Positions 38,400 to 51,910 are shown, numbered from the stretch's first letter. The stretch is 64,000 nucleotides of DNA from IMGVR_UViG_3300023296_000874:124001-188000; one strand, 5' to 3'. Made by a program: numbers and translations. Notes: a model not told the origin generated them from the letters alone.

Positions 38400-38417
38400 G
38401 TGTATCTCCGGTGTGTA

Positions 38418-38852
38418 TCAGTTCAGCTCGAAGGCTTCTTCGAGCTTGCCGCTCAGAGGAATGTTCACAAGGGACTCCCTCATGGCTCGGGAGCGGTCCC
38501 AGGGGGACCATGCAAATCGGGCAGTCCCTACGGCGTCCTTGGGAAGTGCAAAGGTCCTCCCGTCGTCACACCGGAAAATCACCATCTTCTCGGCGATCTT
38601 CGTTCCTGATGTCACTCCGAAGGCTTCTTCGAGTGCAGGGGGCGTGGAGACGTTGAACAGTCCGTCCCTTGGAGCACGACGCCGTGTGTACGGGCTGTGC
38701 ATGAAACGGGCCTTGCCGGTCAGCTCGTAGGGGATGAAGAAGACGTGGCCTTCCTCGTCCCTGAAACGAGCCCACTTGTCGGCTGTCTTGACCGTAGCTG
38801 AATGCTCAACCGCCCAGGCCAGCTTGTAGATCTCGCGTGCGAGCTTCTTCAT
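38418..38852 (-). CDS. Hypothetical late protein
   Basis: 144 aa. MKKLAREIYKLAWAVEHSATVKTAD, with a short internal repeat (FRDEEGHVFFIP / FRCDDGRTFALP). Confidence 0.7.
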   Translation of the reverse strand: MKKLAREIYKLAWAVEHSATVKTADKWARFRDEEGHVFFIPYELTGKARFMHSPYTRRRAPRDGLFNVSTPPALEEAFGVTSGTKIAEKMVIFRCDDGRTFALPKDAVGTARFAWSPWDRSRAMRESLVNIPLSGKLEEAFELN

Positions 38853-39412
38853 GGTTTCTCCATCAGGTTCCGAAGGTCGTCCTCAGCACTTCCCAGGCTA
38901 CCGTCCTCATTCTCCTCCACCTTGATGCGTGAACCTTTCACATCAGGAGAGGCAAGTACGGAAGGGATGAATACGGGGACGTCTCGGTCTACATGGGTTG
39001 AGGTTTTGGGGTTCGCGGTTCGGGACGGGACGTAGCTAACTTTTCCAATCTGACTCCCGAGACGATCTACCGATGTGATCAACTCCCGAAGGAGTCTGTG
39101 TGTTTCCACATCCGGAGCCGTACTTCGGTCCAGTCCCTTGACGGACTCCACAAAACGATTATGAAGCTCCTCGTAAGAAGGCTCCTCAATCGGTGCGGGG
39201 CCGCGACGTCTCTTGAGTCCCTTCTCGGCGGGCTTGGGTCTCTGCACCGCTGGCGGCACCACCTTGATCTCGCCCTTCTTGATGGCAGTCCTGAGCTGAG
39301 CGCTCCGACGTACAATGCGGTCGTCGATCTCAACCGTACCCACTCTGAACACAATGTTGGGAGTGACGTCGCTGAGCCGGAGTCCGGCAATGTTGCACTT
39401 CAGTGTGATCAT
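38849..39412 (-). CDS. Hypothetical protein, neck module
   Basis: 187 aa, coupled on both sides. Confidence 0.7.
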   Translation of the reverse strand: MITLKCNIAGLRLSDVTPNIVFRVGTVEIDDRIVRRSAQLRTAIKKGEIKVVPPAVQRPKPAEKGLKRRRGPAPIEEPSYEELHNRFVESVKGLDRSTAPDVETHRLLRELITSVDRLGSQIGKVSYVPSRTANPKTSTHVDRDVPVFIPSVLASPDVKGSRIKVEENEDGSLGSAEDDLRNLMEKP

Positions 39413-39870
39413 CAGGAGCCCACCATGATGTACTTCTCGAGCATCTCAACGGCCAGTCGGTCCTGAGCCTTCTCCATGGCGTCAGCCACGAAGTTGAGAG
39501 GATCAATGCCCGGATGCTTGGGGTTGTCGCTGAGGCGGCGGAATGCTACTCCCCTACGGCGCTCACGGGCGGTAGGGATGGCCTTCAGGGACTTGAGGTC
39601 GATGGGGATGACACGGTTGCGCACGTACCGCATCTGGTGAGGCTTGACACCCTGATCGAGGTAGAAGGAAGGGTGGTCGGAGTACACGAGGATCTTGCCG
39701 GGCAACATCTTCCACTTGATGCTGCGCTTGATCTCTTCCTTGTTCTCCAGGTTGGTCTTGCCAATGGCAATCTTGAGCTCTTCAACCGTGAGCTGCCCGA
39801 GCCGGACCAGCATCCGGTTCTCGTTGGCCCGATTGGCAACCGCGATGTCGTTGTTCTCTACGAGGGCCAC
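39412..39870 (-). CDS. Putative neck / tail-completion protein (HK97 gp10-like)
   Basis: 152 aa. IKRSIKW...HPGI..LNFVADAMEKAQ pattern, plus position in the module. Confidence 0.5.
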   Translation of the reverse strand: MALVENNDIAVANRANENRMLVRLGQLTVEELKIAIGKTNLENKEEIKRSIKWKMLPGKILVYSDHPSFYLDQGVKPHQMRYVRNRVIPIDLKSLKAIPTARERRRGVAFRRLSDNPKHPGIDPLNFVADAMEKAQDRLAVEMLEKYIMVGS

Positions 39871-40230
39871 TCAATCTCCTATGACGGTCTCGTCCGATTG
39901 GTACCACCACTGGCCGTCGAAGATGTACACGGCCCCATCATTGACGATGACAGCCTTGTGGCGTCCAGGAGGAATCGGACGCCGACGGGATCGCTTGAAT
40001 TTCTTGGACACGGGAGCTCCGTCATCCCATGTGTCCTGGGTCGCCTTGGCGGTGTTCCCCGGAAGCACGGTCACTTGCTCGACCTTGGCTGTGTATCGAC
40101 CATTCTCGTTGATGTCCTCGGCCCATGCTTTGGTAGGGTCAAAGGCGACGCGGAACAATCCGTACTCTCGCAGGTGAGCCGTCAGGCGGCGGCTCAGTAC
40201 TCCAATATCTCGACTCGTACTCATAATCAC
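39871..40230 (-). CDS. Hypothetical protein, neck module
   Basis: 119 aa, coupled. Confidence 0.65.
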   Translation of the reverse strand: MIMSTSRDIGVLSRRLTAHLREYGLFRVAFDPTKAWAEDINENGRYTAKVEQVTVLPGNTAKATQDTWDDGAPVSKKFKRSRRRPIPPGRHKAVIVNDGAVYIFDGQWWYQSDETVIGD

Positions 40231-41582
40231 CTCACAATTCGACCGTAGGTCGGGGATCGACCTCGGTCCTGCATACCATCACGCGCTTTCTCTTCGCCTG
40301 TGTTGGTGTTGTCGTTGATCTGTGGGTACACGGTGCCCTCCGCACCGGGCTTACCGAACCCACCGTGCTGGCGGGTTTGAGGGTAGGCCAGGTTGGCGAG
40401 CATCTCAGCATTGGCAGGAACCTTGTACCGGATGTCCTTCTCACCGAAGTAGCCGATCATGAAGTGCTGCTGAAGGATGTTGCCACGGTTGGAGGGAACG
40501 TTCACCGCGCCAATGGAGTAGCGGTCGTTGTTCTGCCGGACAATGAAGTCGCGCTGGCTGACCATCGGGGTGGGTCCAGTCCAAACCTCGTACTGGTGGA
40601 GTACCTGCATCCCGTTCTGAGTCAGCTCAATGCGGCGCTCGCCGTCCTGAGGAGCGATCAGGATGTCGTAGGGTCCCTCGTAGCCACCCTGGATGCTCGT
40701 ACCGAAGCAGTTGAGGCAGTCGTTCTCAGCTTGCTTGTGAACGTCCGAGTAGCAAGCGCACCGCACTCCCACCCACTTCCGGATGAACAGCTTGACGGCC
40801 TCGCCGCCTTGCTCGAGGATCCAGCGGTTGCGCCGAATGCCCTCCTTCCAGATGTAGTCCAACTTCTCAATCTCATGCGCGCTGACGCCCTCTACACCCT
40901 TGAGCGGAGTCTCAATCTGAGCTCCCGTGCCGTCATCTACTACGGTGGTGAGCTTGTAGAAGGTCCGCTGTCCGATCTGCCCCGTGAGGAGCGTCGTGTT
41001 GAAGCGGTAGCTCATAGTCACAACAGAGGAGAGGGTAGGGAGCACAGGCGTCACGAGCTTCCGGGTCACCTTGTCCCAAATGCGGGCCTGGTTGAGGAAT
41101 ACCTCGCCGGTAGCTCCGTTCACGCTGCGCACGGGCACAGCCACTCCGTCGATCTTCACTACCACGTCGGAAGGGACGTTGGCGGGGATCGCTTGGGATC
41201 CTTCCTTTACAATCGGGTTCGGCACCTGGATGATGTAGAGACCTTCAGGGTGGTCAGCGCCTCGAGCCGTCATCATTCCGCTGACGTCTTCGTTCAGTAC
41301 CGCCTGGTTCTGGGTGCTGTCACGGAAGAAGGTGGTTCCGATGGGTACGGTGTTGACCTTGGTGTAGGTCGCCCACTGACTGTCCGAGGATCGGTAGAGG
41401 TTGACGCCAAGCACCGTCCACTTCCCATTCCCCAGGATGAGGGCGGGATTGTCCCAACGCACGTCCATCATCCCCACGTCCGGTGAGGTCACGAACATGT
41501 TCAGGGGTGCGATGGGTGTGCGCGGATCATCGCGCTCTCTTGGGTCGGTCTCCCGACTCAGCCTGTAGGTCTCATTAGGCAA
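40227..41582 (-). CDS. Head-completion / neck protein with FN3-like N-terminus and Cys Zn motif
   Basis: 451 aa. RCAC...DCLNCFGTSIQGGY resembles large-myovirus neck proteins. The segment VRWDNP...GVNLYRS is FN3-like. Confidence 0.6.
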   Translation of the reverse strand: MPNETYRLSRETDPRERDDPRTPIAPLNMFVTSPDVGMMDVRWDNPALILGNGKWTVLGVNLYRSSDSQWATYTKVNTVPIGTTFFRDSTQNQAVLNEDVSGMMTARGADHPEGLYIIQVPNPIVKEGSQAIPANVPSDVVVKIDGVAVPVRSVNGATGEVFLNQARIWDKVTRKLVTPVLPTLSSVVTMSYRFNTTLLTGQIGQRTFYKLTTVVDDGTGAQIETPLKGVEGVSAHEIEKLDYIWKEGIRRNRWILEQGGEAVKLFIRKWVGVRCACYSDVHKQAENDCLNCFGTSIQGGYEGPYDILIAPQDGERRIELTQNGMQVLHQYEVWTGPTPMVSQRDFIVRQNNDRYSIGAVNVPSNRGNILQQHFMIGYFGEKDIRYKVPANAEMLANLAYPQTRQHGGFGKPGAEGTVYPQINDNTNTGEEKARDGMQDRGRSPTYGRIVR

Positions 41583-42216
41583 GGTTCACTCCCGGTACGA
41601 GGCGACGCTCGCGGATACTCACCACGAGGTCTACGAAGTTGTCGGGTCTGTAGGATGCGCTCACCACGTCCCAGAGCAGGGAGTAGCTTTCCTCGTGACG
41701 CTCAACGGGTAGCCACCGGTCGAGCAGGTCTTCTGCGCCGTGCTTGTGGATGTAGCGGCTGAAGTCCGGAGCGCTGTCTGCCAGGAAGGATGCGGTGTGG
41801 TTCCACACGCGGGAATCAGTCTCGCCCATCGTCTCGAGCAGGGAGGCTACGTTGATGTGGAACGTCACTTTGGAGCTGAAGAAGTGCTCCATGTGGGGCT
41901 GTCCGCCTACCTCGAGGATGTCCGTGGTCTCGTCCACGATCTCATCTCGTACCGCTGCAACGATGCCGCTGGCGCTCAACATCTCGGCGTAGAGGTCAGA
42001 AGTGCCAAGCACCTTGTTCGGTGTGGCCCACTTCTTCGCCTTGTCCTTGCGGTTGCCGCCGTGGATGCTGTCCTGCTCATCGAGCAAGTCCTTCTGGAGC
42101 TCCCGAACGATGGTATGTCCACCGGGACGGGGCTTCTTCAGACCGTGATCGATCTTCTTGAGGGCCGTCTGCGTGACGTAGTCATTCGCCAGCAGGTCTT
42201 GTAGGGTCTGGGGCAT
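41575..42216 (-). CDS. Hypothetical late protein
   Basis: About 213 aa from ATG 42216, directly downstream of a promoter motif copy. Confidence 0.7.
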   Translation of the reverse strand: MPQTLQDLLANDYVTQTALKKIDHGLKKPRPGGHTIVRELQKDLLDEQDSIHGGNRKDKAKKWATPNKVLGTSDLYAEMLSASGIVAAVRDEIVDETTDILEVGGQPHMEHFFSSKVTFHINVASLLETMGETDSRVWNHTASFLADSAPDFSRYIHKHGAEDLLDRWLPVERHEESYSLLWDVVSASYRPDNFVDLVVSIRERRLVPGVNLA

Positions 42217-42250
42217 GTTGCGCTCGCAAAGGTGTTCAAGCACCCTGGAG

Positions 42251-42265
42251 TACAAATGGACTATG
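42251..42265 (-). promoter_or_regulatory. Candidate late promoter motif, copy 4 (CATAGTCCATTTGTA)
   Basis: Consensus match at the head of the neck/actin/terminator gene run. Confidence 0.7.
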
Positions 42266-42277
42266 AGTGGCGGATCT

Positions 42278-42967
42278 CTACTCGCGGAACTGGTGGTCCA
42301 GTACGTCTGACAGTGCGGGCGGGTAGAACTCTTCGCTGTCTGAAACCCCGATACCAGGCCGGACTGACTCCGTGTCCAAGCTGATTGCCATCAGCCGTAC
42401 CGACGCGGGGACGTGAATCGGAGTGCCGGTGTACGAGTACATGCAGACTTTCTGTCCGCTGTCTCCTCGTAGGTGGTCGCTCCAGTTCGCCATGGCCCCA
42501 ACCTCGTCGAACAGCACCACGTCCGCCCGTCCTACATCCATCGTTCGAGAGGACCAAGCATGTGCATCGATGCCCGCCCTCCTCAACATATCCCTCGTGT
42601 ACGGGTACGCGGAGTACGCTGCTACAGATCCATCGCTGAGCATCAACTCACCCATTCGAGTGAGCATGTCCGTCTTGCCCGAGCGTCGGCCCAAGCACAA
42701 CAGGATCACTTCGGGGTCGGGGTCTGACCTGTAGCGGTCAGATGCCTGAAGCCTGTCAAGATAGGCCCTCTCGACAGGTTCAAGCTCCAATCCCATGCAG
42801 AGCTTCATCAAGAGGCGCTGGATGGGGGTTGAGCTGCGGGTGGTGATGGTGAATGCCGAGGGCACCGGCAAGGCTGCGGGTATCGGCGGGGCGATTACTA
42901 CGCAGTCTGGATGTATCTCATCAGTCCAGAGGAGATGGAGTCTTGCTTCGCTCGGATCCACTGGCAT
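42278..42967 (-). CDS. Truncated terminase-large-subunit-like P-loop ATPase
   Basis: 229 aa. PIQRLLMK, Walker A LGRRSGKT, Walker B VVLFDE and coupling motif TGT are present. No nuclease domain. Confidence 0.6.
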   Translation of the reverse strand: MPVDPSEARLHLLWTDEIHPDCVVIAPPIPAALPVPSAFTITTRSSTPIQRLLMKLCMGLELEPVERAYLDRLQASDRYRSDPDPEVILLCLGRRSGKTDMLTRMGELMLSDGSVAAYSAYPYTRDMLRRAGIDAHAWSSRTMDVGRADVVLFDEVGAMANWSDHLRGDSGQKVCMYSYTGTPIHVPASVRLMAISLDTESVRPGIGVSDSEEFYPPALSDVLDHQFRE

Positions 42968-43547
42968 CTACACGTCTCCTCACAATGTCGGTGATGTCGC
43001 TGCCCCACTCGCCCAACACGTCGAGGGCGGCTTCACGGGTGAGCTTCTTCACCGGGAGATGCTCAATCGATGAAACAACGCCATCGAAGCAGAGTACCTC
43101 GGGGTACGTCATCAGCATACCGGCGCGCATCTGTCCGGGCGCGATGTCAAACTGGACGTAGTCGCCACGGTTGAAGTGTTCGCGGGCGATGCTCCCCTTC
43201 TTCTTCCCGTCAGCCTTGGGTCCGCTGGTGTCAGGCTCAACGAGCTCGAAGTGCGTCTCAAGCCCGCTCTCCTCCCAGCACACATTGGGCTCAAAGCCGC
43301 GATAGAGCAGGTCGGTGTAGACCTCCATCTTGACGTAGAGGCCGCTCTCGTCGTCGTCAATCTCGTCACCGAGCTGACCCGCCTGAATCCAGTAGCCCGC
43401 ATCCAGGATGGATGCGATCAAGGAGGCGTAGTCCTCTTCGCTGAAGGTCTCTACCGACTGCGCGATCTCCGACTCTGAGATCTGCTGAACCTTGTCAGCG
43501 AGGTCAAAGAAGGTGCCCGCGAGGATGTCTTCCTGTGTGAACGGCAT
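42921..43547 (-). CDS. Hypothetical protein
   Basis: 208 aa, acidic N-half, possible small beta-barrel at the C-terminus. Confidence 0.7.
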   Translation of the reverse strand: MPFTQEDILAGTFFDLADKVQQISESEIAQSVETFSEEDYASLIASILDAGYWIQAGQLGDEIDDDESGLYVKMEVYTDLLYRGFEPNVCWEESGLETHFELVEPDTSGPKADGKKKGSIAREHFNRGDYVQFDIAPGQMRAGMLMTYPEVLCFDGVVSSIEHLPVKKLTREAALDVLGEWGSDITDIVRRRVDASGSERSKTPSPLD

Positions 43548-44047
43548 CAGTACTCCACTGTCTTAGACGGCGATTCGTACCGCAACCGGGCTTTCTCAAT
43601 CTCAACCTTCTTGCGGTTCAGATCGCGCCCGTCCGTTGCGAGGATCGGCTGGTTGTCTTCGCTCAGTCCGGCAAAGAGCCAGTCCTTGCCATTGCGGTCC
43701 CGCACTTGGTCGCCGTGCATCAGGACGCGCTTGCGAGGGTCCTCGTGCATCTCACCGAACACGGAGCGCATAGGCATCAGCCCGTACCGCTTGGGTCCGG
43801 AGAGTACAAGGCTCGGAGGGCTTCGTCGTCCTGCCACGGTTGCTCTCCTATCTCGGTGCTTCCACGCGGGCTCGAGGCGGCGGCTGAATGCTCGGAGCTC
43901 GTCCGCAAGCACGCTGCCTTCCTCTACACCGAAGCGAGGGTCCTCAAGGACGCTGATCGCCTGTCCGATGAGCTCGGCGGGGTGGAACTTGTTGAAGCTC
44001 TCACGGTTGAGAGCGGCAAGCCTCTGAATCTCAGTTGATACGGTCAT
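43547..44047 (-). CDS. Hypothetical late protein with STEIQRLAA N-terminus
   Basis: ATG 44047 overlaps the upstream stop (ATGA). Confidence 0.7.
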   Translation of the reverse strand: MTVSTEIQRLAALNRESFNKFHPAELIGQAISVLEDPRFGVEEGSVLADELRAFSRRLEPAWKHRDRRATVAGRRSPPSLVLSGPKRYGLMPMRSVFGEMHEDPRKRVLMHGDQVRDRNGKDWLFAGLSEDNQPILATDGRDLNRKKVEIEKARLRYESPSKTVEY

Positions 44048-46038
44048 TCTGCCCACCTCTGTCGCATACGGCGGGAAGCCGCGTCGGATTGGTCACGCTT
44101 GGCATCACTCATGGAGTGGCGCTTCAGCCAGGTTTCAGCGTTGTCGCGGGCTCCAATGATCTGGCCCCACGTCTGCTTCAGCTCAGCACGTAGCGGTGTG
44201 TCCACCCGGTAGATGCGGCGGTTCTTGGCAATCACCTGGAACCGCTTGATCAGGTCGTGGCTGCGGATCATTGCCCGGAGGTCCTTGAGGCCCTCACCGA
44301 ACTTCTTCGCGTCCTGATCTCGGGAGGCACTCATCATCCTTCCGATGATGCTGTCGTACTCGTTGGCTACCTGAGCCACCACGTACTCGCCCAAGTCCTG
44401 CATCGCCTGCCCATTGGCTACCAGCTTCTGCTCAGCCTTGTTGAGCGCGCCGTTGCGCTTCTTTGCCTGCACCTTCACAACCACTGCGTCACGGGCTTCC
44501 TGGTACTGAGCCAGTACCCCACGTCGGATCTTGAGGTGGTCGTCTGCACGCACTACACGGGCGAGCTTCTGAATCTGACTGGATGTTGTCACCTTGGTAC
44601 TCCCGAAGGCCTCAAAGGCTTTGTAAGCGAACCACCTCTGTAGGCGGGGGAGCGCGTAGGTGTCAAGAGTATCCCTGCCTACCCACTCGAATGCATCGTT
44701 CTCCCAGTCCAGTTCAACCTCACCTGTGAACTTTCGCGAGAGGAAGATGTGGACCGTGTCCTCACCGGGCGAGTTGGCTACGCCGAGTAGCTTGAGCTCC
44801 GTAGGCTTCAGCTTGGTCTCCTCGTAGGCTTCACGCTTGGCGGCTTGTGCGGGGCTCTCACCCTTTTCTACGCCGCCCACAACGAGGGTCCAACTGCCCG
44901 GCATCCATGGAGCCGTAATGCCGCGTCGTACAAGGAGGATCTTGTTGTCGCGCATGAAGCATACGCCTGCGGCCTTGTAGTCGTTCGTGGCTGCATTCTT
45001 GGGGGGTTCTTCAGGCACGGGGCAATCCTTGGGACGTCGGTCGGTGTTGTAGAAGTCGGTCCAGAACACCGAGATGATCGCGAACTCGTTCTTCCTTCGC
45101 CCGCCGCGAAGTACGATGGTCAGCCTGTCCTTGGGGTCTTCCCATACAAGCTTCCTGCCGTACTCCAACTCCTCAGTCACCCGCTTGCCTGCGGGAGTCT
45201 GCATGGACTTCTCACGGTTGAGCCACTTCTGCCAGTTCTTGATGCCGCTCCGGATGTCCTGCACGGTGATGCCGCGCTCATCCATTCGACGCTGGGTGTG
45301 CGGTGTGAGAACGAGCTTGCTGTTGTTCGGTCCGCGTTCAGCCAAGAGGTCATAGACGATCTGCTCGTCCTTGCCATCAAAGTCACGTCCGCCTTCCTCG
45401 ATCTCAGCGATGAGCTGGTCACGTACTCGGGGGTTGCGCACGTTGCGGTAGACGCGCTCAGCCAGGTAGCAAGGTCCAGCCTCGGTGGGCAGTCCCAGTG
45501 AAGGACTGAGGTCAGCCGTCCGGCTCTTGAATGGGAACCGATGTACCTTGCTCATGCCCCACACCTCAAGAACAGGAGAGAACGTCCCAGTCGGCTCGGG
45601 TCCTGTGTAGGGCGCGTCGCCGTCTGAGTAGGAAAGTGTCGCGTGTGGACGGTAGTTCGGGAACCTGTCCGAGATGTCGTAGCCAGCATCCATCAGCTCT
45701 CGCTTGACGGCTTTGCGCAGTGCGCCCATGTCGCGGCTGAAGGCGATGGGCATGTGGTGGATGCTCTGTCCGGAGGGGTTCTTGAACTCGTCCTTGGCTT
45801 GCAGCGTACAGATCACGTCACCGAAGCGTCGTACCTGTCGGGAAACCAGAGCGAGGAACTCCTGCTCACGTTCGGGTGGGACGTTGCCCACGATCAGGAA
45901 GGTGATGTGCGCCGGGGAACGGTCGTTCGGCAGCTTGGGAAACTGGTGGGCGAGCCAGATAGGCATCGGCATGAACAGCCCGACAGACGTATAGTCTCCG
46001 GTCTTGTTCCCGTCCAGTGGTGAGGCATTCTTGATCAT
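44044..46038 (-). CDS. Multidomain protein: 2H phosphoesterase + DUF4258-like domain + Nudix hydrolase + helical C-domain
   Basis: Two HxT motifs (AHITF, PHATL). LVLTPHTQRRMDERGITVQDI is DUF4258-like. Nudix box GGVEKGESPAQAAKREAYEET. Likely start ATG 46038. Confidence 0.8.
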   Translation of the reverse strand: MIKNASPLDGNKTGDYTSVGLFMPMPIWLAHQFPKLPNDRSPAHITFLIVGNVPPEREQEFLALVSRQVRRFGDVICTLQAKDEFKNPSGQSIHHMPIAFSRDMGALRKAVKRELMDAGYDISDRFPNYRPHATLSYSDGDAPYTGPEPTGTFSPVLEVWGMSKVHRFPFKSRTADLSPSLGLPTEAGPCYLAERVYRNVRNPRVRDQLIAEIEEGGRDFDGKDEQIVYDLLAERGPNNSKLVLTPHTQRRMDERGITVQDIRSGIKNWQKWLNREKSMQTPAGKRVTEELEYGRKLVWEDPKDRLTIVLRGGRRKNEFAIISVFWTDFYNTDRRPKDCPVPEEPPKNAATNDYKAAGVCFMRDNKILLVRRGITAPWMPGSWTLVVGGVEKGESPAQAAKREAYEETKLKPTELKLLGVANSPGEDTVHIFLSRKFTGEVELDWENDAFEWVGRDTLDTYALPRLQRWFAYKAFEAFGSTKVTTSSQIQKLARVVRADDHLKIRRGVLAQYQEARDAVVVKVQAKKRNGALNKAEQKLVANGQAMQDLGEYVVAQVANEYDSIIGRMMSASRDQDAKKFGEGLKDLRAMIRSHDLIKRFQVIAKNRRIYRVDTPLRAELKQTWGQIIGARDNAETWLKRHSMSDAKRDQSDAASRRMRQRWAE

Positions 46039-46039: not shown

Positions 46040-46432
46040 TCAGTCCAATAGGTCCGCAAGCCACCCTTCCCGGTTGGCCTCGATGTCTTCCCTATTGGTC
46101 TCGGCCCGGCGTCGGATGCGCTCAAGTTCGTTGGTGGTCAACATCCAGATCTCGTTCAATCGTTCTTGAACGGCGACACCGAAATAGGAGATGTCAGAGC
46201 CGAAACGGCGCTGGCTGTTTTCCACTACTGATAGGACACCGCGACGTAGCGTCTGTGCAGTATCTTCGATGTTCGTAGAGGATCGGGTAGTGAACTTCAC
46301 CCGCTCGGTATCAGTCACCAACCAGTACTCCTCGAGACCGAAGTCCGACTGCACTTTGATGAACCAGTAATCGGTAGATGACCCGAAGCGTCGATCTATG
46401 TTCTGAACACGGCTGAGTTTGCCAAGTGACAT
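46040..46432 (-). CDS. Hypothetical protein with internal tandem duplication
   Basis: GGAGG before ATG 46432. Two copies of N..RRFGS...Y...VQ...E.W..T..E...R..TN.ED. Confidence 0.7.
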   Translation of the reverse strand: MSLGKLSRVQNIDRRFGSSTDYWFIKVQSDFGLEEYWLVTDTERVKFTTRSSTNIEDTAQTLRRGVLSVVENSQRRFGSDISYFGVAVQERLNEIWMLTTNELERIRRRAETNREDIEANREGWLADLLD

Positions 46433-46592: not shown

Positions 46593-47288
46593 ATGTTCAA
46601 ATCAATCCGTGACGCCCTCTTCGTTTCTGACGAAGGCGGGGCCGATACTCCCACGGCTGCTCCAACTTCGGACGTTGAAGCCCTTCTGGCGAACCTCCAC
46701 GGTTCGCCCGCTGCTGCCCCCAGCGGAACCATCACGCCTCCCACTCCCGCGCCGACCCCGGCTCCGGTTGCAGTGGTGGCGACTGGCGGGTGGGTAGAAG
46801 GACGTCCGTTCGAGGAGCTGTACGCTGAGGCCGGTGTGCCGGTTGGCAGCTACCCCGTGGAGCGCTTCCTTGCGGTTGCGGACGGGCTGAAGGCGATGGG
46901 ACCTCAGGTTGCCAAGCAGGCACTCGCCGCCATGGATGCGGGTGATGCCTCTTGGAGTGCCGCTGACGTACGCTCTGACCAGCAGGCCAAGCTCGGCGTG
47001 TTGGCGGGCATCGACGGACAGATGGACGCTCAGGTGACCTCTGCTACGGCGGCACGGGATGCTGCGGTGACTGCTGCGGATGAGACGGTGGCCGAGGCTA
47101 CCTCACTGCTCCGCGAGCAGATTGCAGAGCTCGAAGCCCAGATCACTTCCTTTGCGGAGGAGGCCGGAGCCGAGAAGGCCGGAGCCGAAGCCGCACTCGA
47201 AGCGACGACCGCATTGGCCGCTCGTGAGAAGGCTCGGGTGCTCAACGCAACCCTGCGCCTCACCGAAGCCTCGCAGTACCTCGACTGA
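46593..47288 (+). CDS. Ala-rich coiled-coil protein at head of ABC module
   Basis: 231 aa with AAGGAG RBS. Pro/Ala linker followed by a long coiled coil. Confidence 0.8.
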   Translation: MFKSIRDALFVSDEGGADTPTAAPTSDVEALLANLHGSPAAAPSGTITPPTPAPTPAPVAVVATGGWVEGRPFEELYAEAGVPVGSYPVERFLAVADGLKAMGPQVAKQALAAMDAGDASWSAADVRSDQQAKLGVLAGIDGQMDAQVTSATAARDAAVTAADETVAEATSLLREQIAELEAQITSFAEEAGAEKAGAEAALEATTALAAREKARVLNATLRLTEASQYLD

Positions 47289-47383
47289 ACACGAACCGCC
47301 TACACTTCGAACCTCAACACTTTGTTCATCTTGCTGCGACTCCCGTAGCATACCCGCCGAAAAGGCACCCTGGAGAATACGAC

Positions 47384-49066
47384 ATGGCCCTCACCCCACT
47401 CGCAAAGAACATCGTCAAGGGAGTTGGCGCGCTCGCCATCCTCGCCGTGACGTGCAGCGTTGGCTTCTACATCTACAGCAACTCCGGCGACGACCCGGCG
47501 ACCACGGTGGCCTCGGCTCCCGGTGAAGCGGCTCCCGCTCAGGCAGAGGATCGCGGCGTCTTCAGCGGCATCTTCGGGGGCGGTGGCAACAGCGGCCCGC
47601 TCGGCTCCGAGGGCAACCCCCTCACCGTGAGCATCGTGAGCTGGCACGGCTACGTTGGCGGGCTGACCGCGAACGGCGGCTTGACCACGCAGCCCGGCAG
47701 CATCAACGCCCGGAACGGCCTGTACGTGAAGTACATCCTCGACGACGGCATCCCGACGATGGCCGAGCGCTTCGAGCCGGGTGACGCGCAGTGCATGTGG
47801 CGCACCGTCGACTTCTGGGCTCAGGAGCAGCCTGCCCTCCGCAGCGTGGGGCTCGACGGCCGCATGGTGATGGTGGTGGACAACTCCCGAGGCGGTGATG
47901 CGATCATCGGACGCAAGGGCACCATCGAGAGTGTGGAAGACCTGGCCGGGAAGACGGTGGCGATCACCGAATTCACGCCCAGCCACATGCTCGGCCTCTA
48001 CGCGGTGGAGCAGAGCTCCCTCAGCGGACGCGCCAAGAGCAGCGTGAACTTCCGGGGCTTCCCCGACAACGCGACGGCACTCGCCGCCTTCCGCGCCGGA
48101 CAGGTTGACGCCCTCATCACCTGGGAGCCCGAGACCAGCATCGCCCTGACCACCGTGGACGGTGCGACCCCCGTGTTCACCACCGCCGAAGCCACCTCGC
48201 TGATCTACGACGGTATCGTGTGCAACACCCGCACCATCGAGACCCACCCCGACGTCATCCAGCGCTTCGTTGGCGGATGGATGGAGGGTGCCACGGCAGC
48301 CCGTGCGAACCCCGGTGCCGGTGCTGACGTGCTGACCGCCAACGAGCCGCTCTTCGCCGCCCTGGTTGCGGACAACGGACGCAACTTCCTGACCGACCGC
48401 GTGTTCGGCGGCATCGTGTGGAGCGACCTCGCGGACAACATCCGAGTGCTGGGCCTCGCCGGAAGCGGTGGCGACCAGATTGCCCGGATCTACAGCGAGA
48501 GCAACGACATCTGGCGGGCGAACACCAACCTGCTCGACGGCATGGCTCAGGTGAGCTCCGGTGACGCCTTCGACGACACCTTCATCCGCGCCCTGATGGA
48601 CACCGCACCCCAGGCTCGAACGGCTGCGGCAGCCCCCGAGTTCACCTTCACCTCCACCGAACGGGCGACCGTGGTGCAGACGGGTGGCTCGGCTCTGACC
48701 AAGCCCATCGCGATCAACTTCGCCACGGGACAGGCCACGCTGAACGCACGAGGCAAGGCGACCATCGAGGCTGAGCTCATCCCCCTGCTCGACGCTACGG
48801 CTGGAAGCTACGTGCGAGTGAGTGGCAACACGGACTCCACGGGTGGTGCGGCGCTCAACACCCGCCTCTCCGGACAGCGTGCCGGAGTGGTGAGCGAGTG
48901 GCTGCAGAGCGAGTGGGAGATTCCGGGTGACCGCCTCGAGGTGGTTGGCAACGGCGAGGACAACCCGATCTGTGACGAGAGCAACCCGACCGGCGACGGC
49001 TACGACGACCTCGAGACCTGCCGGGCGGCGAACCGCACGACCCGCTTCGAGATTCTCTCCCGCTGA
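47384..49066 (+). CDS. ABC substrate-binding protein (NMT1/SsuA/TauA-like) fused to C-terminal OmpA-like domain
   Basis: 560 aa. N-terminal TM anchor. PBP2-type DNSRGGDAII...DLAGKTVA...AFRAGQVDALITWEP. OmpA motifs INFATG, GNTDSTG...N.RLS.QRA and NRTT. Confidence 0.85.
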   Translation: MALTPLAKNIVKGVGALAILAVTCSVGFYIYSNSGDDPATTVASAPGEAAPAQAEDRGVFSGIFGGGGNSGPLGSEGNPLTVSIVSWHGYVGGLTANGGLTTQPGSINARNGLYVKYILDDGIPTMAERFEPGDAQCMWRTVDFWAQEQPALRSVGLDGRMVMVVDNSRGGDAIIGRKGTIESVEDLAGKTVAITEFTPSHMLGLYAVEQSSLSGRAKSSVNFRGFPDNATALAAFRAGQVDALITWEPETSIALTTVDGATPVFTTAEATSLIYDGIVCNTRTIETHPDVIQRFVGGWMEGATAARANPGAGADVLTANEPLFAALVADNGRNFLTDRVFGGIVWSDLADNIRVLGLAGSGGDQIARIYSESNDIWRANTNLLDGMAQVSSGDAFDDTFIRALMDTAPQARTAAAAPEFTFTSTERATVVQTGGSALTKPIAINFATGQATLNARGKATIEAELIPLLDATAGSYVRVSGNTDSTGGAALNTRLSGQRAGVVSEWLQSEWEIPGDRLEVVGNGEDNPICDESNPTGDGYDDLETCRAANRTTRFEILSR

Positions 49067-49099
49067 ACCCTTGCCGGGCGACCGGTACTTGAACCCAAG

Positions 49100-49135
49100 G
49101 CAGGGCCGAGGTGGCATACACCACCTCGGCCCTGC
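49100..49135 (+). promoter_or_regulatory. Perfect 15-bp intercistronic hairpin after the SBP gene
   Basis: gcagggccgaggtgg-cataca-ccacctcggccctgc, with no U-tract. Confidence 0.65.
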
Positions 49136-49150
49136 GCATAGGAGCCTGAG

Positions 49151-49933
49151 ATGAACCCGAACAAGAACATCACCCGCACCATGGGATACGCCCTCGGTGC
49201 CACCAGCATCCTGATGGTGCTGACCCTCTGGAGCGCGCTTGCGGGCTTCGACATGGTGAGCCCCGCCAAGCTCCCCGCACCCTGGAACGTAGCCTCTGCA
49301 TGGTGGGCACTCGCCTTCACCAAGGGACAGCTCGGGGGAGCGATCTTCGCCTCCGTAAGCCGCATCGGCATCGCAGCAGTGCTCATGATCCTCGTTGGCT
49401 TCCCCATGGGCATCCTGATGGGCTCAAGCAAGGCTGTGAATGCCTTCTTCAGCCCGCTCGTTGACCCCTTCCGCTCCGCGCCCATCGTGGCCGTGATCCC
49501 CATCCTCGTGATGTGGTTTGGCATCGGAGAGACGATGAAGGTGGTGTTCTTGTGGCTCGGTGCTGTGGTGTACCTTGTGCCTATGGTGCGAGATGCCATC
49601 CAGGCGGTTGACTCCCGGTGGTTCAAGGCAGCAAAGGACCGGGGCGCATCCGACACCGAAGCGTTGGTGTACGCCGTGCTGCCTATGGCGAAGCCGCGCA
49701 TCGCTGACGCACTCATCACCAGCATCAGCGTGATGTGGACCTACATCACGGTTGCGGAGCTCGTGAACGCTGACAGCGGCATCGGGAAGCTCATCGAGAC
49801 CTACCGAAAGGTGAGCCAGATGGACAGCGTCTTCGCAGGCATCCTGACCATCATGGTGCTGGCTCTGATCTCCTACACGGCGATGGTTGCCTTGCGGAAC
49901 AAGCTCTACCCGGACTACAAGTACGAAGCCTAA
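49151..49933 (+). CDS. ABC transporter permease (NitT/TauT type)
   Basis: 260 aa with about 6 TM segments, RSAPIVAVIPILVMWFGIGE, an EAA-like FKAAKDRGAS, and AELVNADSGIG. Confidence 0.9.
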   Translation: MNPNKNITRTMGYALGATSILMVLTLWSALAGFDMVSPAKLPAPWNVASAWWALAFTKGQLGGAIFASVSRIGIAAVLMILVGFPMGILMGSSKAVNAFFSPLVDPFRSAPIVAVIPILVMWFGIGETMKVVFLWLGAVVYLVPMVRDAIQAVDSRWFKAAKDRGASDTEALVYAVLPMAKPRIADALITSISVMWTYITVAELVNADSGIGKLIETYRKVSQMDSVFAGILTIMVLALISYTAMVALRNKLYPDYKYEA

Positions 49934-49973
49934 GTTCGATACTCTCTGACTTTCAACGGCTTCCACTCGTTAC

Positions 49974-50795
49974 ATGAGAACAGAGCCCAACCACGGGACA
50001 GGTGACATGATTCTGACACTCAACGACATTGTGCAGGAGTACCCCGACCCCTTGAACAAGGGTGCCGTGGTGAGGATTGCTGACGGCGTATGCCTCGAGT
50101 ACCCGGAGCCCAGCATCAACTTCATCATGGGACCCTCCGGCTGTGGCAAGACCACCCTGCTGAGGCTCATGGGAGGCGTGCGACCCTCCAACGTGGTGAC
50201 TCCTACCTCCGGTACGGTGACCATCGACGACAAGCCGTGCATCGGAATGCATCCTGACAGCGTGACCGTCTTCCAGCAGCTCGCCAACTACCCCTTCCTC
50301 ACCGTGGAGGAGAACATCCGCTTCGCCTTCAAGACCGGGGAGTGGGCCGCGCGGGTTGACGCCAAGGAGCAGGACGAGCGAGTGGAGTGGATCCTCGAAG
50401 CAGTGGGCCTCGCCGACCGGAGGGCCAACTACCCTTCGCAGTGCTCGGGTGGGCAGAACCAGCGGATTGCACTCGCCTCGGCGTTGGTGCTCAAGCCACG
50501 CATCCTCCTCATGGACGAGCCCTTCCGTGGCCTCGACCCCAACACCCTGCGCGAAGTGCAGGAACTGCTGGTGCGTATCTGGACCGAGATCCAGTGCCTG
50601 GTGGTGTTTGTTGGACATGACGTTGAAGAGGCGCTCCTGATTGCGGACCGTGTGACAGTGCTGACAACCAAGCCTGCCACCGTCGCTAAGGAGTTCCACA
50701 TCGCAACTCCACGCTCCATGCGGAGCGAGGACTGGCTGGAAACCACGCCGACGCGTGCAACCGAACGTGAGATTCTGCGCTTGATGCGCGGCTGA
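49974..50795 (+). CDS. ABC transporter ATP-binding protein (NitT/TauT type)
   Basis: Walker A GPSGCGKTT, Q-loop VFQQ, signature CSGGQ, Walker B LLMDEP, H-loop GHD. Confidence 0.92.
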   Translation: MRTEPNHGTGDMILTLNDIVQEYPDPLNKGAVVRIADGVCLEYPEPSINFIMGPSGCGKTTLLRLMGGVRPSNVVTPTSGTVTIDDKPCIGMHPDSVTVFQQLANYPFLTVEENIRFAFKTGEWAARVDAKEQDERVEWILEAVGLADRRANYPSQCSGGQNQRIALASALVLKPRILLMDEPFRGLDPNTLREVQELLVRIWTEIQCLVVFVGHDVEEALLIADRVTVLTTKPATVAKEFHIATPRSMRSEDWLETTPTRATEREILRLMRG

Positions 50796-50843
50796 TTTAG
50801 AGAGGGCTTCGATGACTACTATCCCCACAAGAGAGGGAACACG

Positions 50844-51752: not shown

Positions 51753-51910
51753 GCGGTTTCGAACTGTGCATCGTGGCCGGAATAGTGTGGTACGGAGCTG
51801 TAGCCGCACACGGCCTCCGCGTGTACCGCATTGCTCGGGAGGACGGCCGCTCCTACTCTTTCACATGGAACGTCCTCACCGGACCTTCCGTCATCTACCA
51901 GGATTGAACC

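What the first reader, a model, noticed from the sequence alone, without database searches (positions are those of the whole stretch)
44044..46038. Late polyprotein of nucleotide-signal-degrading domains separated by K/R-x-A linkers
Seen: 2H phosphoesterase (two HxT motifs), DUF4258-like domain, Nudix hydrolase and a helical domain. The junctions read MIKNAS, KSRTAD, PKNAAT and IQKLARVVRAD. Established: the phage 2H enzyme Acb1 degrades CBASS cyclic nucleotides, and Nudix enzymes hydrolyse ADP-ribose/NAD-type molecules. Inference: a packaged, protease-processed anti-defence cassette delivered with the DNA to destroy several immune second messengers at once.
Basis: partly seen in the sequence, partly recalled or inferred. 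Interest (0 to 1): 0.78.

Follow-up and report, generated by a model that had tools for sequence, protein, structure and literature searches.

The report
Four-module phage effector (polyvalent) protein
This is an intact 664-residue gene of a very large contractile-tailed phage that strings together four separate modules (a 2H phosphoesterase, an RNase-toxin-like domain, a Nudix hydrolase and a basic helical tail), a new example of the already described "polyvalent" proteins that phages are thought to carry in the particle and deliver with their DNA.

Summary
The ORF is real: 44044..46038, minus strand, 664 aa from the ATG.

- **Residues 1-172:** a LigT/ThpR-type 2H phosphoesterase with both HxT motifs.
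- **Residues 173-345:** a DUF4258-like BECR-fold (RNase-toxin type) module.
- **Residues 350-482:** a Nudix hydrolase with an intact Nudix box.
- **Residues 495-664:** a basic helical module of unknown function.

Each module recurs on its own or in other combinations, in proteins of 171 to 3381 aa. Their partner domains (ART-PolyVal, InPase, CCA-type nucleotidyltransferase, topoisomerase IB) are those of the "polyvalent protein" network of Iyer et al. 2017.

The gene opens a tightly packed neck/tail block of a huge phage. The same slot in relatives holds 2H-Nudix, 2H-BECR, 2H and BECR as two separate genes, or a 1362-aa peptidase-2H-ART-GNAT protein in the cultured phage Tunturi_5.

- K/R-x-A is no commoner than chance (9 sites against 8.9 expected), and MIKNAS is the N-terminus.
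- No peptidase is present.
- The 2H domain is not Acb1-like by sequence, and one module is a predicted RNase, not a signal degrader.

Packaging and injection are plausible by context only. Verdict: a new member of a known, computationally defined kind, of moderate interest.

The parts
44044..46038 (-). Whole gene: 664-aa four-module protein (P0001), stop codon at 44044..44046
   Evidence: The identical protein is called on 8 metagenome contigs of up to 257 kb.
45523..46038 (-). Module 1, residues 1-172: 2H phosphoesterase of LigT/ThpR type
   Evidence: Pfam PF13563 scores 29.5 bits, above its cut-off of 27. A profile of 63 relatives hits LigT/ThpR structures 1vdx and 2fyh at E 1e-6, and 1iuh and 5h7e more weakly, while Acb1 7t26 reaches only E 1.7. 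118 copies occur in the listed hits, at any position in proteins of 171-3381 aa.
45901..45909 (-). First HxT motif (H44-I-T46)
   Evidence: H44 and T46 are invariant columns of alignment A4. Coordinates were verified.
45637..45645 (-). Second HxT motif (H132-A-T134)
   Evidence: H132 is invariant and T134 nearly invariant in A4. Coordinates were verified.
45004..45522 (-). Module 2, residues 173-345: DUF4258-like BECR-fold (RNase-toxin type) domain with a conserved Cys-containing N-terminal extension of about 60 residues
   Evidence: The 36-sequence alignment A2 has 13 invariant columns. 18 of 36 members hit Pfam DUF4258, best E 2e-6. The AlphaFold model has pLDDT 86.7 and pTM 0.80. The best structural matches are almost all BECR RNase toxins (CdiA-CT, RelE, BrnT, YoeB, HigB, ParE, colicin E5/D, RegB), but with Z no higher than 5.4.
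45493..45528 (-). Junction of modules 1 and 2: KSRTADLSPSLG, the conserved start motif of module 2
   Evidence: [KR]-x-[AS]-D-L-x-P-x-L-G opens the module whether it is internal or at a protein's N-terminus. In locus L016 a gene boundary falls exactly here: the 2H gene ends and a separate gene starts with MRRNADL.
45274..45300 (-). Predicted active-site helix of module 2, HTQRRMDER (H247, R251, D253, R255); the S323 codon lies at 45070..45072
   Evidence: H, R, M, D and R are invariant in A2. The S/T position is nearly invariant (T in most sequences, S here). This arrangement, His in the first helix plus Ser/Thr in strand 4, is the one described for BECR RNases in PMC5512222.
44593..44991 (-). 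Module 3, residues 350-482: Nudix hydrolase
   Evidence: Pfam NUDIX scores E 1.4e-18. PHROG Nudix families match, as does phrog_15528, a 'portal protein' family in which the match falls on the query's Nudix module. PDB Nudix enzymes of mixed specificity match at E 6.5e-7 or weaker. Relatives reach 61-74% identity in P0012 and P0002.
44809..44877 (-). Nudix box GGVEKGESPAQAAKREAYEETKL
   Evidence: Read directly from the sequence. It fits GX5EX7REUXEEXGU except for K in place of the last G.
44047..44556 (-). Module 4, residues 495-664: basic helical module of unknown function with a conserved C-terminal tail
   Evidence: Residues 481-664 carry a net charge of +16. The only homologue found is P0046, a stand-alone 187-aa protein in a 478-kb phage-like contig, and the C-terminal tail ending RRMRQRW-x-E is shared. 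Further searches found nothing.
46040..46432 (-). Upstream gene (130 aa, unknown function); its stop lies 1 nt before the ATG of the main gene
   Evidence: A gene of the same length and position also precedes the 2H-Nudix relative in L007.
28336..44047 (-). Downstream co-directional neck/tail block: four small unknown genes, the 451-aa neck/tail protein (40227..41582), a Volactin-family protein, the 397-aa protein, an SbcD-like protein and the 1194-aa tail sheath (28336..31920)
   Evidence: Gene gaps from the main gene to 38849 range from -47 to +61 nt. The sheath is identified by PHROG at E 2e-35. The 451-aa family is viral, and its nearest Atlas cluster's predicted model resembles neck and head-tail-joining proteins. 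Synteny holds with LR745208.1, Tunturi_5, L008 and L016.

Best explanation
The gene encodes a compact 'polyvalent' effector protein of a huge contractile-tailed phage. It consists of four autonomous modules fused in one chain: a LigT/ThpR-type 2H phosphoesterase, a DUF4258-like BECR-fold RNase module, a Nudix pyrophosphohydrolase and a basic helical tail.

Shown here:
- The modules and their boundaries.
- Intact catalytic motifs in the first three modules.
- Free recombination of the modules in other phage proteins, alongside hallmark polyvalent-protein domains.
- A position at the head of the tightly packed neck/tail gene block.
- A variable effector at the same slot in related huge phages: fused, partly fused, or split into separate genes.

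Inferred:
- The protein is made late with the virion proteins, carried in the particle and released into the cell with the DNA. There each module works on its own.
- The shared chemistry is that of RNA and nucleotide phosphoesters. The BECR module cuts RNA, leaving 2',3'-cyclic phosphate ends. The 2H module opens 2',3'-cyclic phosphates or 2'-5' linkages, on RNA ends or on small cyclic or oligo-nucleotides. The Nudix module cleaves a nucleoside-diphosphate-X bond, such as an RNA 5' end or cap, or an ADP-ribose/NAD-derived molecule.
- My best guess is that RNA is the main target, either for host RNA takeover or for healing of RNA damage. Degradation of immune signals is a possible second job of the 2H and Nudix modules.
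- Nothing requires cleavage between the modules.
For: - Domains and motifs.
- Modularity: among the 149 other listed hits, the 2H module occurs 118 times (43 N-terminal, 33 internal, 33 C-terminal, 9 stand-alone). The BECR module occurs 41 times, in proteins of 183-2308 aa.
- Partner domains in those proteins: PolyA_pol/CCA-type nucleotidyltransferase (32 of 82), topoisomerase IB (19), ART-PolyVal (4), InPase (2), HAD_SAK_1, SWIM, Fic, PARP and one RNA ligase. ART-PolyVal and InPase are families defined from polyvalent proteins (PMC5512222).
- Slot conservation, upstream of the 451-aa neck/tail protein homologue:
  - L008 holds 2H-BECR (55% identity).
  - L007 holds 2H-Nudix (74% identity) behind a 130-aa upstream gene of matching length and position; the 1.9-kb contig ends before the 451-aa region.
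  - L016 and L017 hold 2H and BECR as two overlapping genes.
  - LR745208.1 holds a 2H ORF 6 kb upstream.
  - Cultured Tunturi_5 gp321 is SprT-like peptidase + 2H + ART-PolyVal + GNAT.
- Late and virion context: sheath, gp5-like spike, tape-measure-like and neck proteins are co-directional, with gaps of -47 to +61 nt.
- The giant relatives P0106 and P0010 lie six genes upstream of a weak Phage_capsid_4 hit in 138-520 kb phage contigs.
- Published predictions state that phage polyvalent proteins sit next to virion genes, and that 2H and Nudix domains fused to MuF or portal proteins are head-packaged.
Against: - There is no direct evidence of packaging, injection or any enzymatic activity. No MuF, portal or peptidase domain is present in this protein.
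- The only homologue of the C-terminal module lies among small non-structural genes, so that module is not obviously a virion anchor.
- The BECR assignment rests on sub-threshold Pfam scores for this protein and on structural Z scores of 5.4 or less, a range the tool warns can be unspecific.
- The substrates of the 2H and Nudix modules cannot be told from sequence. A LigT-like sequence does not exclude cyclic-oligonucleotide cleavage.
- Four small unknown genes separate this gene from the first recognisable virion gene.
Confidence: 0.5

Rival explanations
1. One reading: a virion-packaged polyprotein is cut by a phage protease at K/R-x-A linkers into separate enzymes. Together these destroy several immune second messengers (CBASS, Pycsar or type III CRISPR cyclic nucleotides; Thoeris ADPR-derived signals).
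For: - 2H enzymes include Acb1, and Nudix enzymes hydrolyse ADPR- and NAD-type molecules (established knowledge).
- Iyer et al. propose this role for 2H and Nudix domains in head-associated phage proteins.
- The modules exist as separate genes in L016 and L017, so they can work apart.
- An Acb5-family gene lies near a relative of the BECR module in L014.
Against: - [KR]xA is at chance frequency. One 'linker' is the N-terminus, and another is the conserved start of a domain.
- No peptidase is found in the protein or its neighbours.
- The Acb1 model scores below its cut-off, and the family profile prefers LigT/ThpR.
- Of 82 relatives scanned, 1 hits Acb1 against 49 hitting 2_5_RNA_ligase2.
- The middle module is an RNase-toxin fold, not a signal hydrolase.
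- The commonest partner of this 2H module is an RNA 3'-end nucleotidyltransferase.
Confidence: 0.15
2. A cytoplasmic enzyme that is not packaged. It is a late-expressed RNA repair or turnover fusion that keeps phage translation going. It would heal tRNA or mRNA ends damaged by host ribonucleases (2H), process 5' ends or clean up nucleotide by-products (Nudix), and trim RNA (BECR). It is simply co-transcribed with the structural genes.
For: - The 2H module is LigT/ThpR-like.
- In giant relatives it is directly followed by a CCA-type nucleotidyltransferase (P0106: 2H at 13-180, PolyA_pol at 229-379). It also co-occurs with HAD_SAK_1 'RNA repair' domains and once with an RNA ligase.
- Jumbo phages commonly carry RNA-repair sets (PMC7824862).
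- No virion-anchoring domain is detected.
Against: - An RNase-toxin-type domain is an odd partner for a repair enzyme.
- The slot is held in Tunturi_5 by a classical polyvalent protein with ART, GNAT and peptidase domains, which are host-modifying rather than repair functions.
- No RNA ligase, polynucleotide kinase or CCA enzyme is found in the 64-kb window.
- The position at the head of the neck/tail block is conserved across relatives.
Confidence: 0.25
3. An artefact: a chimeric assembly, or a decaying fusion of unrelated genes with no function.
For: - The four-module architecture is unique in two very large protein collections.
- Close relatives lack one or two of the modules.
Against: - The identical 664-aa protein is called on 8 contigs from several samples and sources.
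- The frame is open throughout, and all catalytic motifs are intact.
- The gene overlaps its downstream neighbour by 4 nt and starts 1 nt after its upstream neighbour, as in an operon.
Confidence: 0.02

Closest known systems
Polyvalent proteins of phages and conjugative elements (Iyer, Burroughs, Anand, de Souza, Aravind 2017, PMC5512222); nearest concrete example: Tunturiibacter phage Tunturi_5 gp321 (PP885688.1)
   Same: - Several unrelated enzymatic domains sit in one chain.
- The gene is phage-encoded and lies next to virion genes.
- Its modules recombine with ART-PolyVal, InPase, GNAT and zincin-peptidase domains in other proteins.
- gp321 occupies the syntenic place, directly upstream of the 451-aa protein homologue, and also contains a 2H domain.
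   Different: - It is small (664 aa).
- It has no zincin-like peptidase, no MuF or portal domain, and no ART or methylase-helicase.
- Its RNase-like module is DUF4258-like rather than one of the PBECR1-5 Pfam families, none of which hit.
- Nudix is rare in the original survey: the word occurs once in the paper.
- No sequence similarity to gp321 was detectable with my module profiles.
Acb1 (phage T4 anti-CBASS 2H phosphodiesterase; PDB 7t26; Pfam PF23474)
   Same: It belongs to the 2H superfamily and has two HxT motifs. It is a phage enzyme that could in principle open phosphodiester bonds of cyclic oligonucleotides.
   Different: - The Acb1 Pfam model scores 19.4 bits against a cut-off of 27, and only over the second HxT motif.
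- The family profile finds Acb1 only at E 1.7, while LigT/ThpR structures score E 1e-6.
- From my own knowledge, Acb1 is a small stand-alone protein that is not known to be virion-borne.
LigT/ThpR RNA 2',3'-cyclic phosphodiesterases (PDB 1vdx, 2fyh, 1iuh, 5h7e)
   Same: These are the best sequence matches among solved structures. The alignments cover both HxT motifs.
   Different: - They are cellular stand-alone enzymes.
- Here the domain has a conserved N-terminal extension (G-x-K-T-G-D ... S-V-G-x-F) and is a shuffled phage module.
- Its activity is untested.
BECR-fold RNase toxins: DUF4258 (PF14076), RelE/HigB/YoeB/BrnT toxins, EF-Tu-dependent CdiA-CT tRNases (PDB 7vmc, 5i4q), and phage PBECR domains fused to MuF or portal proteins
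   Same: - The H-x-Q-x-R-M-D-x-R-G-I helix matches the start of the DUF4258 model.
- The predicted fold aligns best with these toxins.
- It has a His in the first helix plus a Ser/Thr in the last strands, as described for BECR RNases.
   Different: - The module is about 170 residues long. It has a conserved 60-residue N-terminal extension carrying an invariant Cys, and a long helical insert.
- No antitoxin or immunity gene is evident.
- DUF4258 itself has no characterised member (PMC11980606).
- The structural Z scores are low.
Phage Nudix proteins: T4 NudE-like enzymes and Nudix domains fused to portal, MuF or capsid-protease proteins (Iyer et al. 2022, PMC9503650; phrog_15528)
   Same: The Nudix box is canonical. 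The match to the 'portal protein' PHROG family phrog_15528 falls on the query's Nudix module. The gene sits in a late-gene neighbourhood.
   Different: Here the Nudix domain is fused to 2H, BECR and helical modules rather than to a structural protein. No sub-family or substrate could be assigned: PDB hits range over Ap4A, ADPR, CoA and diphosphoinositol-polyphosphate hydrolases.
T4 head-internal proteins and Alt (packaged, cut by the prohead protease, injected)
   Same: They are a functional analogy for the proposed route: made late, carried in the head, active at the start of the next infection (background in PMC9503650).
   Different: There is no sequence relation. The T4 proteins carry a known capsid-targeting sequence and cleavage motif, and neither could be identified here.

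Membership tests
Polyvalent proteins (Iyer et al. 2017) | Two or more domains of disparate biochemical activity in one polypeptide | tested here: met
   There are four modules, three of them with distinct enzyme folds.
Polyvalent proteins (Iyer et al. 2017) | Encoded by a phage, plasmid or conjugative element | tested here: met
   The window carries sheath, gp5-like spike, tape-measure-like and neck genes. It is syntenic with the huge phages LR745208.1 and Tunturi_5.
Polyvalent proteins (Iyer et al. 2017) | In phages: located near late or virion genes | tested here: met
   It is the second gene of a co-directional, tightly packed neck/tail block. The same slot is used in four related loci.
Polyvalent proteins (Iyer et al. 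2017) | Its domains belong to the shared, recombining domain network of such proteins | tested here: met
   The 2H and BECR modules occur in 148 of the other listed proteins. These carry ART-PolyVal, InPase, SWIM, Fic, PARP, PolyA_pol and topoisomerase IB domains. Tunturi_5 gp321 combines 2H with SprT-like peptidase, ART-PolyVal and GNAT.
Polyvalent proteins (Iyer et al. 2017) | Zincin-like metallopeptidase for self-processing (a frequent theme, not obligatory) | tested here: not met
   There is no peptidase Pfam hit, and no HExxH in the protein or nine neighbouring genes.
Polyvalent proteins (Iyer et al. 2017) | Present in the virion and delivered with the DNA | not testable with these tools
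   This needs virion proteomics or infection experiments. The Tunturi paper reports no virion mass spectrometry.
2H phosphoesterase superfamily | Two H-x-T/S motifs in the conserved register | tested here: met
   H44-x-T46 and H132-x-T134 fall on invariant or nearly invariant columns. They align with both motifs of LigT/ThpR structures.
2H phosphoesterase superfamily | Significant match to a 2H family model | tested here: met
   PF13563 scores 29.5 bits against a cut-off of 27. 49 of 82 relatives also hit it.
Acb1 family (anti-CBASS) | Match to the Acb1 model or structure at family level | tested here: not met
   PF23474 scores 19.4 bits against a cut-off of 27. The protein alone against 7t26 gives E 0.31, and the family profile gives E 1.7.
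Acb1 family (anti-CBASS) | Hydrolysis of cyclic di- and tri-nucleotide signals | not testable with these tools
   This needs an enzyme assay.
Nudix hydrolases | Nudix box GX5EX7REUXEEXGU and a match to the family model | tested here: met
   The box lies at residues 388-410 with the catalytic R-E ... E-E intact and the last G replaced by K. Pfam gives E 1.4e-18.
DUF4258 / BECR-fold RNases | Match to the DUF4258 model | tested here: inconclusive
   The protein's own score is 21.6 bits, below the cut-off of 25. However, 18 of 36 aligned relatives hit DUF4258, best E 2e-6, and no other family appears.
DUF4258 / BECR-fold RNases | BECR fold (N-terminal helix plus a 4-5-stranded sheet) | tested here: inconclusive
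   The model is confident (pLDDT 86.7). A whole-PDB search gives almost only BECR toxins at the top, and AlphaFold DB clusters named DUF4258, RelE/ParE and PBECR2 appear. All scores are weak: Z no higher than 5.4, and Foldseek E no better than 3.5e-3.
DUF4258 / BECR-fold RNases | Conserved His in the first helix and Ser/Thr in a late strand | tested here: met
   H247 is invariant. S323 sits at a position that is T in at least 90% of relatives. The configuration is as described in PMC5512222.
Protease-processed viral polyprotein | Recurrent cleavage motif at domain junctions, above chance | tested here: not met
   [KR]xA occurs 9 times against 8.9 +/- 2.7 expected. The junction motifs are domain-internal conserved starts.
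Protease-processed viral polyprotein | A cognate protease encoded in the protein or beside it | tested here: not met
   None was found in the protein or its neighbours. The phage's head protease was not located within the window.
MuF- or portal-fused effectors (MuF toxins) | An N-terminal MuF or portal domain | tested here: not met
   No such Pfam or PHROG hit was found. The phrog_15528 'portal' match falls on the query's Nudix module.

The most novel reading that the evidence does not exclude
A lineage of huge phages keeps a dedicated 'effector slot' at the head of the neck/tail operon. There, RNA- and nucleotide-directed modules are swapped, fused and split. The four-module protein in this window would be loaded into the particle and injected, acting as a coordinated kit. 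The kit would comprise an injected BECR RNase plus 2H and Nudix enzymes.
Probability: 0.15. Interest if true: 0.72.

Novelty: new member of a known kind. Interest (0 to 1): 0.45.

Why it matters
Polyvalent proteins are a large class defined only by computation. Almost none of their 2H, Nudix or BECR modules has been assayed, and packaging has been shown for very few.

This locus offers a clean natural series at one genomic slot: four modules fused, two fused, or the modules as separate genes. A cultured relative, Tunturi_5 gp321, occupies the same slot. Three questions therefore become testable:
- Are such proteins in the particle?
- Are they cut?
- Do the 2H and Nudix modules act on RNA ends or on immune signals?

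The work also brings out a widespread module that, as far as I could find, is undescribed: a DUF4258-like BECR domain with a Cys-containing extension. It further shows a 2H + CCA-type transferase + topoisomerase IB architecture in giant proteins of phages up to 520 kb.

Tried and rejected
- **Single-sequence AlphaFold of the whole protein:** pLDDT 35, unusable. The second and last job went to the middle module, so there is no model of the 2H, Nudix or C-terminal modules.
- **Searches of 50,697 GenBank phage records:** tblastn and megablast with the protein, its first 345 residues and the 19-kb region found nothing.
- **Word-index protein search:** it returned only the protein itself.
- **C-terminal module:** two protein searches, the PDB and the ESM Atlas gave nothing beyond P0046. 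The best Atlas score, 0.60, is noise level.
- **K/R-x-A motif enrichment:** rejected.
- **A linker-specific cleavage motif before the middle module:** rejected. The same basic-x-[AS]-D-L start is present when the module is N-terminal.
- **HExxH or peptidase in the gene or its neighbours:** none.
- **Promoter and terminator scan around the gene:** nothing above shuffles.
- **PDB sequence search of the middle-module profile and of three long partner proteins:** no hits.
- **BFVD viral structure library:** only weak hits, most of them unnamed.
- **CCA-transferase or topoisomerase IB homologue in the window:** none.
- **A prophage-edge reading of the strand switch at about 46.5 kb:** considered but not favoured. 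The plus-strand block also consists mostly of genes with no Pfam family plus typical phage auxiliary genes, and contigs carrying the gene reach 257 kb. This is not proven.
- **PADLOC:** one hit to a candidate Nudix family, PDC-S07, on the Nudix module only. It is uninformative.

Full report
**The object.** The finding is one open reading frame on the minus strand. The mechanical ORF runs from a TTG at 46125 to the stop at 44044 (693 aa). The ATG at 46038 lies one base after the TGA of the upstream gene. It is also the start used in public gene calls: the 664-aa product P0001 is found letter for letter on 8 contigs from several samples, the longest 257,533 bp. All residue numbers below refer to the 664-aa protein.

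**The domains.**
- Pfam finds NUDIX (E 1.4e-18) and 2_5_RNA_ligase2, a 2H phosphoesterase family, at 29.5 bits against a cut-off of 27.
- Below their cut-offs, it also finds Acb1 (19.4 against 27, over the second HxT motif only) and DUF4258.
- The two HxT motifs are H44-I-T46 and H132-A-T134.
- The Nudix box GGVEKGESPAQAAKREAYEETKL is canonical except for K in place of the last G.

**The linker motif.** [KR]-x-A occurs 9 times in the protein, against 8.9 +/- 2.7 in composition-preserving shuffles, so the pattern carries no information. MIKNAS is the N-terminus. KSRTAD belongs to a strongly conserved motif, [KR]-x-[AS]-D-L-x-P-x-L-G, that opens the middle module. The motif is present whether the module is internal or starts a protein, as in MKRT-SDL, MRRN-ADL and MNRR-SDL.

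**Modularity.** An exhaustive HMMER search of 1.84 billion representative proteins gave 2603 hits, none with all four modules. Mapping the listed 149 other proteins gave the following:
- The 2H module (residues 1-172) occurs 118 times. It is N-terminal 43 times, internal 33, C-terminal 33 and stand-alone 9, in proteins of 171 to 3381 aa.
- The middle module (173-345) occurs 41 times, in proteins of 183 to 2308 aa, often as a tandem pair.
- The Nudix module (350-482) recurs at 61-74% identity in P0012, where it is fused to CutA1, and in P0002.
- The C-terminal module (495-664) recurs once, as the stand-alone 187-aa protein P0046.

His segmentation is therefore correct, even though the 'linker motif' is not real.

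**What the modules travel with.**
- Pfam scans of 82 partner proteins show a PolyA_pol/CCA-type nucleotidyltransferase in 32 and topoisomerase IB in 19.
- They also show DUF5661, inteins, HAD_SAK_1 ('Swiss army knife' RNA repair), ART-PolyVal (4), InPase (2), SWIM, Fic, PARP, CutA1 and one RNA ligase.
- ART-PolyVal and InPase are families defined from the 'polyvalent proteins' of Iyer et al. 2017. These are multidomain proteins of phages and conjugative elements that are predicted to enter the host with the DNA (PMC5512222).
- That paper and its successors name 2H and Nudix domains explicitly. They predict that copies fused to MuF, portal or capsid-protease proteins are head-packaged and may counter nucleotide-based immunity.
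- They also note that phage polyvalent proteins lie next to late virion genes.

**The 2H module.**
- A profile of 63 copies has invariant D39, H44, T46, G51, F85, H132, G151 and W160.
- Among solved structures it finds archaeal and bacterial LigT/ThpR 2',3'-cyclic phosphodiesterases at E 1e-6 to 1e-3. Acb1 (7t26) reaches only E 1.7.
- Among relatives, 49 of 82 hit 2_5_RNA_ligase2, 18 hit AKAP7_NLS, 14 hit LigT_PEase and 1 hits Acb1.
- In the giant proteins the module is directly followed by the CCA-type transferase: in P0106, 2H is at 13-180 and PolyA_pol at 229-379.
- From my own knowledge, this recalls the cyclic-phosphodiesterase HD domain attached to the E. coli CCA-adding enzyme, which suggests work on RNA 3' ends.
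- Sequence class does not fix the substrate, so cleavage of small cyclic or 2'-5'-linked nucleotides is not excluded.

**The middle module.**
- The 36-sequence alignment has 13 invariant columns, including a Cys in a 60-residue N-terminal extension and the motif H-x-Q-x-R-M-D-x-R-G (H247, R251, D253 and R255 here). A nearly invariant Thr is a Ser (S323) in this protein.
- Half of the members hit Pfam DUF4258 (best E 2e-6), and no other family appears. DUF4258 is an uncharacterised member of the RelE/ParE (BECR-fold) toxin superfamily (PMC11980606).
- An AlphaFold model built on this alignment is confident (pLDDT 86.7, pTM 0.80).
- Foldseek against the PDB gives only weak hits, but they are RelE, HigB, BrnT, ParE and CdiA-CT toxins.
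- AlphaFold DB clusters named DUF4258, RelE/ParE, toxin 35 and PBECR2 appear at E 3.5e-3 and weaker.
- A Foldseek-independent search of 48,161 PDB chains found only 62 with Z of 2 or more. The top of that list is almost entirely BECR RNase toxins: EF-Tu-dependent CdiA-CT tRNases at Z 5.4 and 4.2, then RelE, BrnT, YoeB, MqsR, colicin E5, colicin D and T4 RegB.
- Each score is low, and the tool warns about such values. The agreement of sequence, motif and fold nonetheless makes a BECR-type RNase the best reading.
- This module is therefore not a nucleotide-signal degrader.

**The C-terminal module.**
- It is predicted helical, though only from the poor whole-protein model, and has a net charge of +16 over residues 481-664.
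- Its one homologue, P0046, shares a conserved C-terminal tail ending RRMRQRW-x-E. It lies among small non-structural genes of a 478-kb contig.
- Further searches were empty. Its function is unknown. Nucleic-acid binding is a guess from the charge.

**Genomic setting.**
- The window's minus-strand block from 46.4 kb down to about 2 kb holds a 1194-aa tail sheath, a gp5-like spike, a tape-measure-like protein and other virion genes.
- From the upstream 130-aa gene down to 38849, the gaps between consecutive genes run from -47 to +61 nt.
- The 451-aa protein five genes downstream belongs to a viral family. The predicted model of its nearest Atlas cluster resembles neck and head-tail-joining proteins.
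- That protein has homologues in an uncultured 485-kb phage (LR745208.1, 45.5%), the cultured 309-kb jumbo myovirus Tunturi_5 (31%) and Bacillus phage G.
- Synteny with these phages extends over the 349-aa and 397-aa proteins, the sheath and the 223-aa protein.
- The gene is thus the second gene of the neck/tail late block of a huge phage. That it is expressed late is an inference from this arrangement.

**The slot in relatives.**

| Locus | What sits at the slot | Calls |
|---|---|---|
| L008 | 367-aa 2H + middle-module protein (55% identity), followed by homologues of the window's 208-aa, 229-aa (weak) and 451-aa (75% identity) proteins | 49, 80 |
| L007 | Complete 329-aa 2H + Nudix protein (74% identity) behind a 130-aa upstream gene of matching length and position; no middle or C-terminal module. 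The 1.9-kb contig ends before the 451-aa region | 48, 50 |
| L016, L017 (two samples) | 2H module (185 aa) and middle module (183 aa, 55% identity) as separate genes overlapping by 17 nt, followed by homologues of the 451-aa, 152-aa, 397-aa, SbcD-like and sheath proteins at 49-62% identity.
| LR745208.1 | A 2H-module ORF about 6 kb upstream of the 451-aa homologue | 75, 77 |
| Tunturi_5 | gp321, the gene directly upstream of the 451-aa homologue, 1362 aa and annotated 'MutT/NUDIX hydrolase'. By Pfam it is SprT-like zincin peptidase + 2H + ART-PolyVal + GNAT + DUF3990, a textbook polyvalent protein | 74, 77 |

- The giant 2H + CCA-transferase + topoisomerase IB proteins (2308 and 3381 aa) lie in a conserved arrangement six genes upstream of a weak Phage_capsid_4 hit, in contigs of 138-520 kb.

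**Interpretation.**
- The evidence places the protein among polyvalent proteins. It meets the features I could test: disparate domains, a phage origin, a virion-gene neighbourhood and membership of the domain network. It lacks the frequent but non-obligatory zincin peptidase and any MuF or portal domain.
- Packaging and injection remain inferences from context and from the published hypothesis.
- On substrates, three observations point to RNA: the RNase-toxin-like module, the LigT-like 2H module with its CCA-transferase partnership, and a Nudix domain of unassignable specificity. I therefore prefer RNA and RNA ends as the main targets. Degradation of immune signals is a possible additional role.
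The existence of split versions shows only that the modules can work as separate chains.

**Novelty and score.** The class and the idea were published in 2017 and 2022. The exact four-module architecture is unique in the two collections searched, but variable architecture is what defines the class. I rate it a new member of a known kind, with interest 0.45. Its value lies in the natural fusion and fission series at one slot, and in the cultured relative that makes packaging and processing testable.

Noticed in passing
window 37350..38399 (-): A 349-aa protein gives a full-length, strong match to the Pfam Volactin family (E 1.7e-64, positions 3-321 of 321) and a weak match to MreB_Mbl. It is thus an actin-fold protein inside the neck/tail structural block of a huge phage. 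A 48%-identical homologue sits at the syntenic place in the 485-kb uncultured phage LR745208.1 (L012 17533-18501).
   Followed up: partly
window 46593..60435 (+): A divergent plus-strand block with higher G+C (0.62-0.64 against 0.59) carries auxiliary-type genes. These are an ABC transporter set (NMT1+OmpA fusion binding protein 47384..49066, permease 49151..49933, ATPase 49974..50795), a carbamoyltransferase (55070..56005), a peptide deformylase (56048..56614), a MopE-type metal-binding repeat protein (56739..57737) and a VWA protein (57970..60435). Whether this is phage cargo or the edge of host DNA was not settled.
   Followed up: partly
window 32561..34024 (-): A 487-aa SbcD/Mre11-like metallophosphoesterase ('DNA repair exonuclease', PHROG E 1e-60) lies between the neck genes and the tail sheath. 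It is conserved at 56% identity at the same place in L016.
   Followed up: no
L013 7819-11907 (Tunturiibacter phage Tunturi_5 gp321, PP885688.1): gp321 is annotated 'MutT/NUDIX hydrolase', but Pfam finds no Nudix domain. It finds SprT-like peptidase, 2H, ART-PolyVal, GNAT and DUF3990, so it is a polyvalent protein in the neck/tail module of a cultured jumbo phage.
   Followed up: yes
L010 10001-20146 (P0106, 3381 aa) and L009 10001-16927 (P0010, 2308 aa): Giant proteins of 138-520 kb phage contigs start with the same 2H module, directly followed in P0106 by a CCA-type nucleotidyltransferase, and contain a topoisomerase IB core. Inteins and LAGLIDADG domains occur in several relatives of this set. 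The genes lie in a conserved arrangement six genes upstream of a weak Phage_capsid_4 hit.
   Followed up: partly
L016 7460-8552 and L017 7260-8352: In a related phage the 2H and BECR-like modules are two separate genes overlapping by 17 nt in different frames. This is a natural split of the fusion seen in the window, and it was found in two independent samples.
   Followed up: yes
L014 15757-16119: A 120-aa gene with an Acb5-family Pfam hit lies about 4.6 kb downstream of P0129, a 1055-aa protein that starts with the BECR-like module. It is a possible anti-defence neighbourhood.
   Followed up: no
L008 1784-2371: A PARG_cat_microb (ADP-ribose glycohydrolase type) gene lies about 0.7 kb upstream of the 2H + BECR relative P0003.
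   Followed up: no
window 46040..46432 (-): The 130-aa upstream gene has no family hit. A gene of the same length sits directly upstream of the 2H-Nudix relative in L007, though its sequence was not compared. By eye the window's protein seems to contain two similar halves, each with an R-R-F-G-S motif.
   Followed up: no
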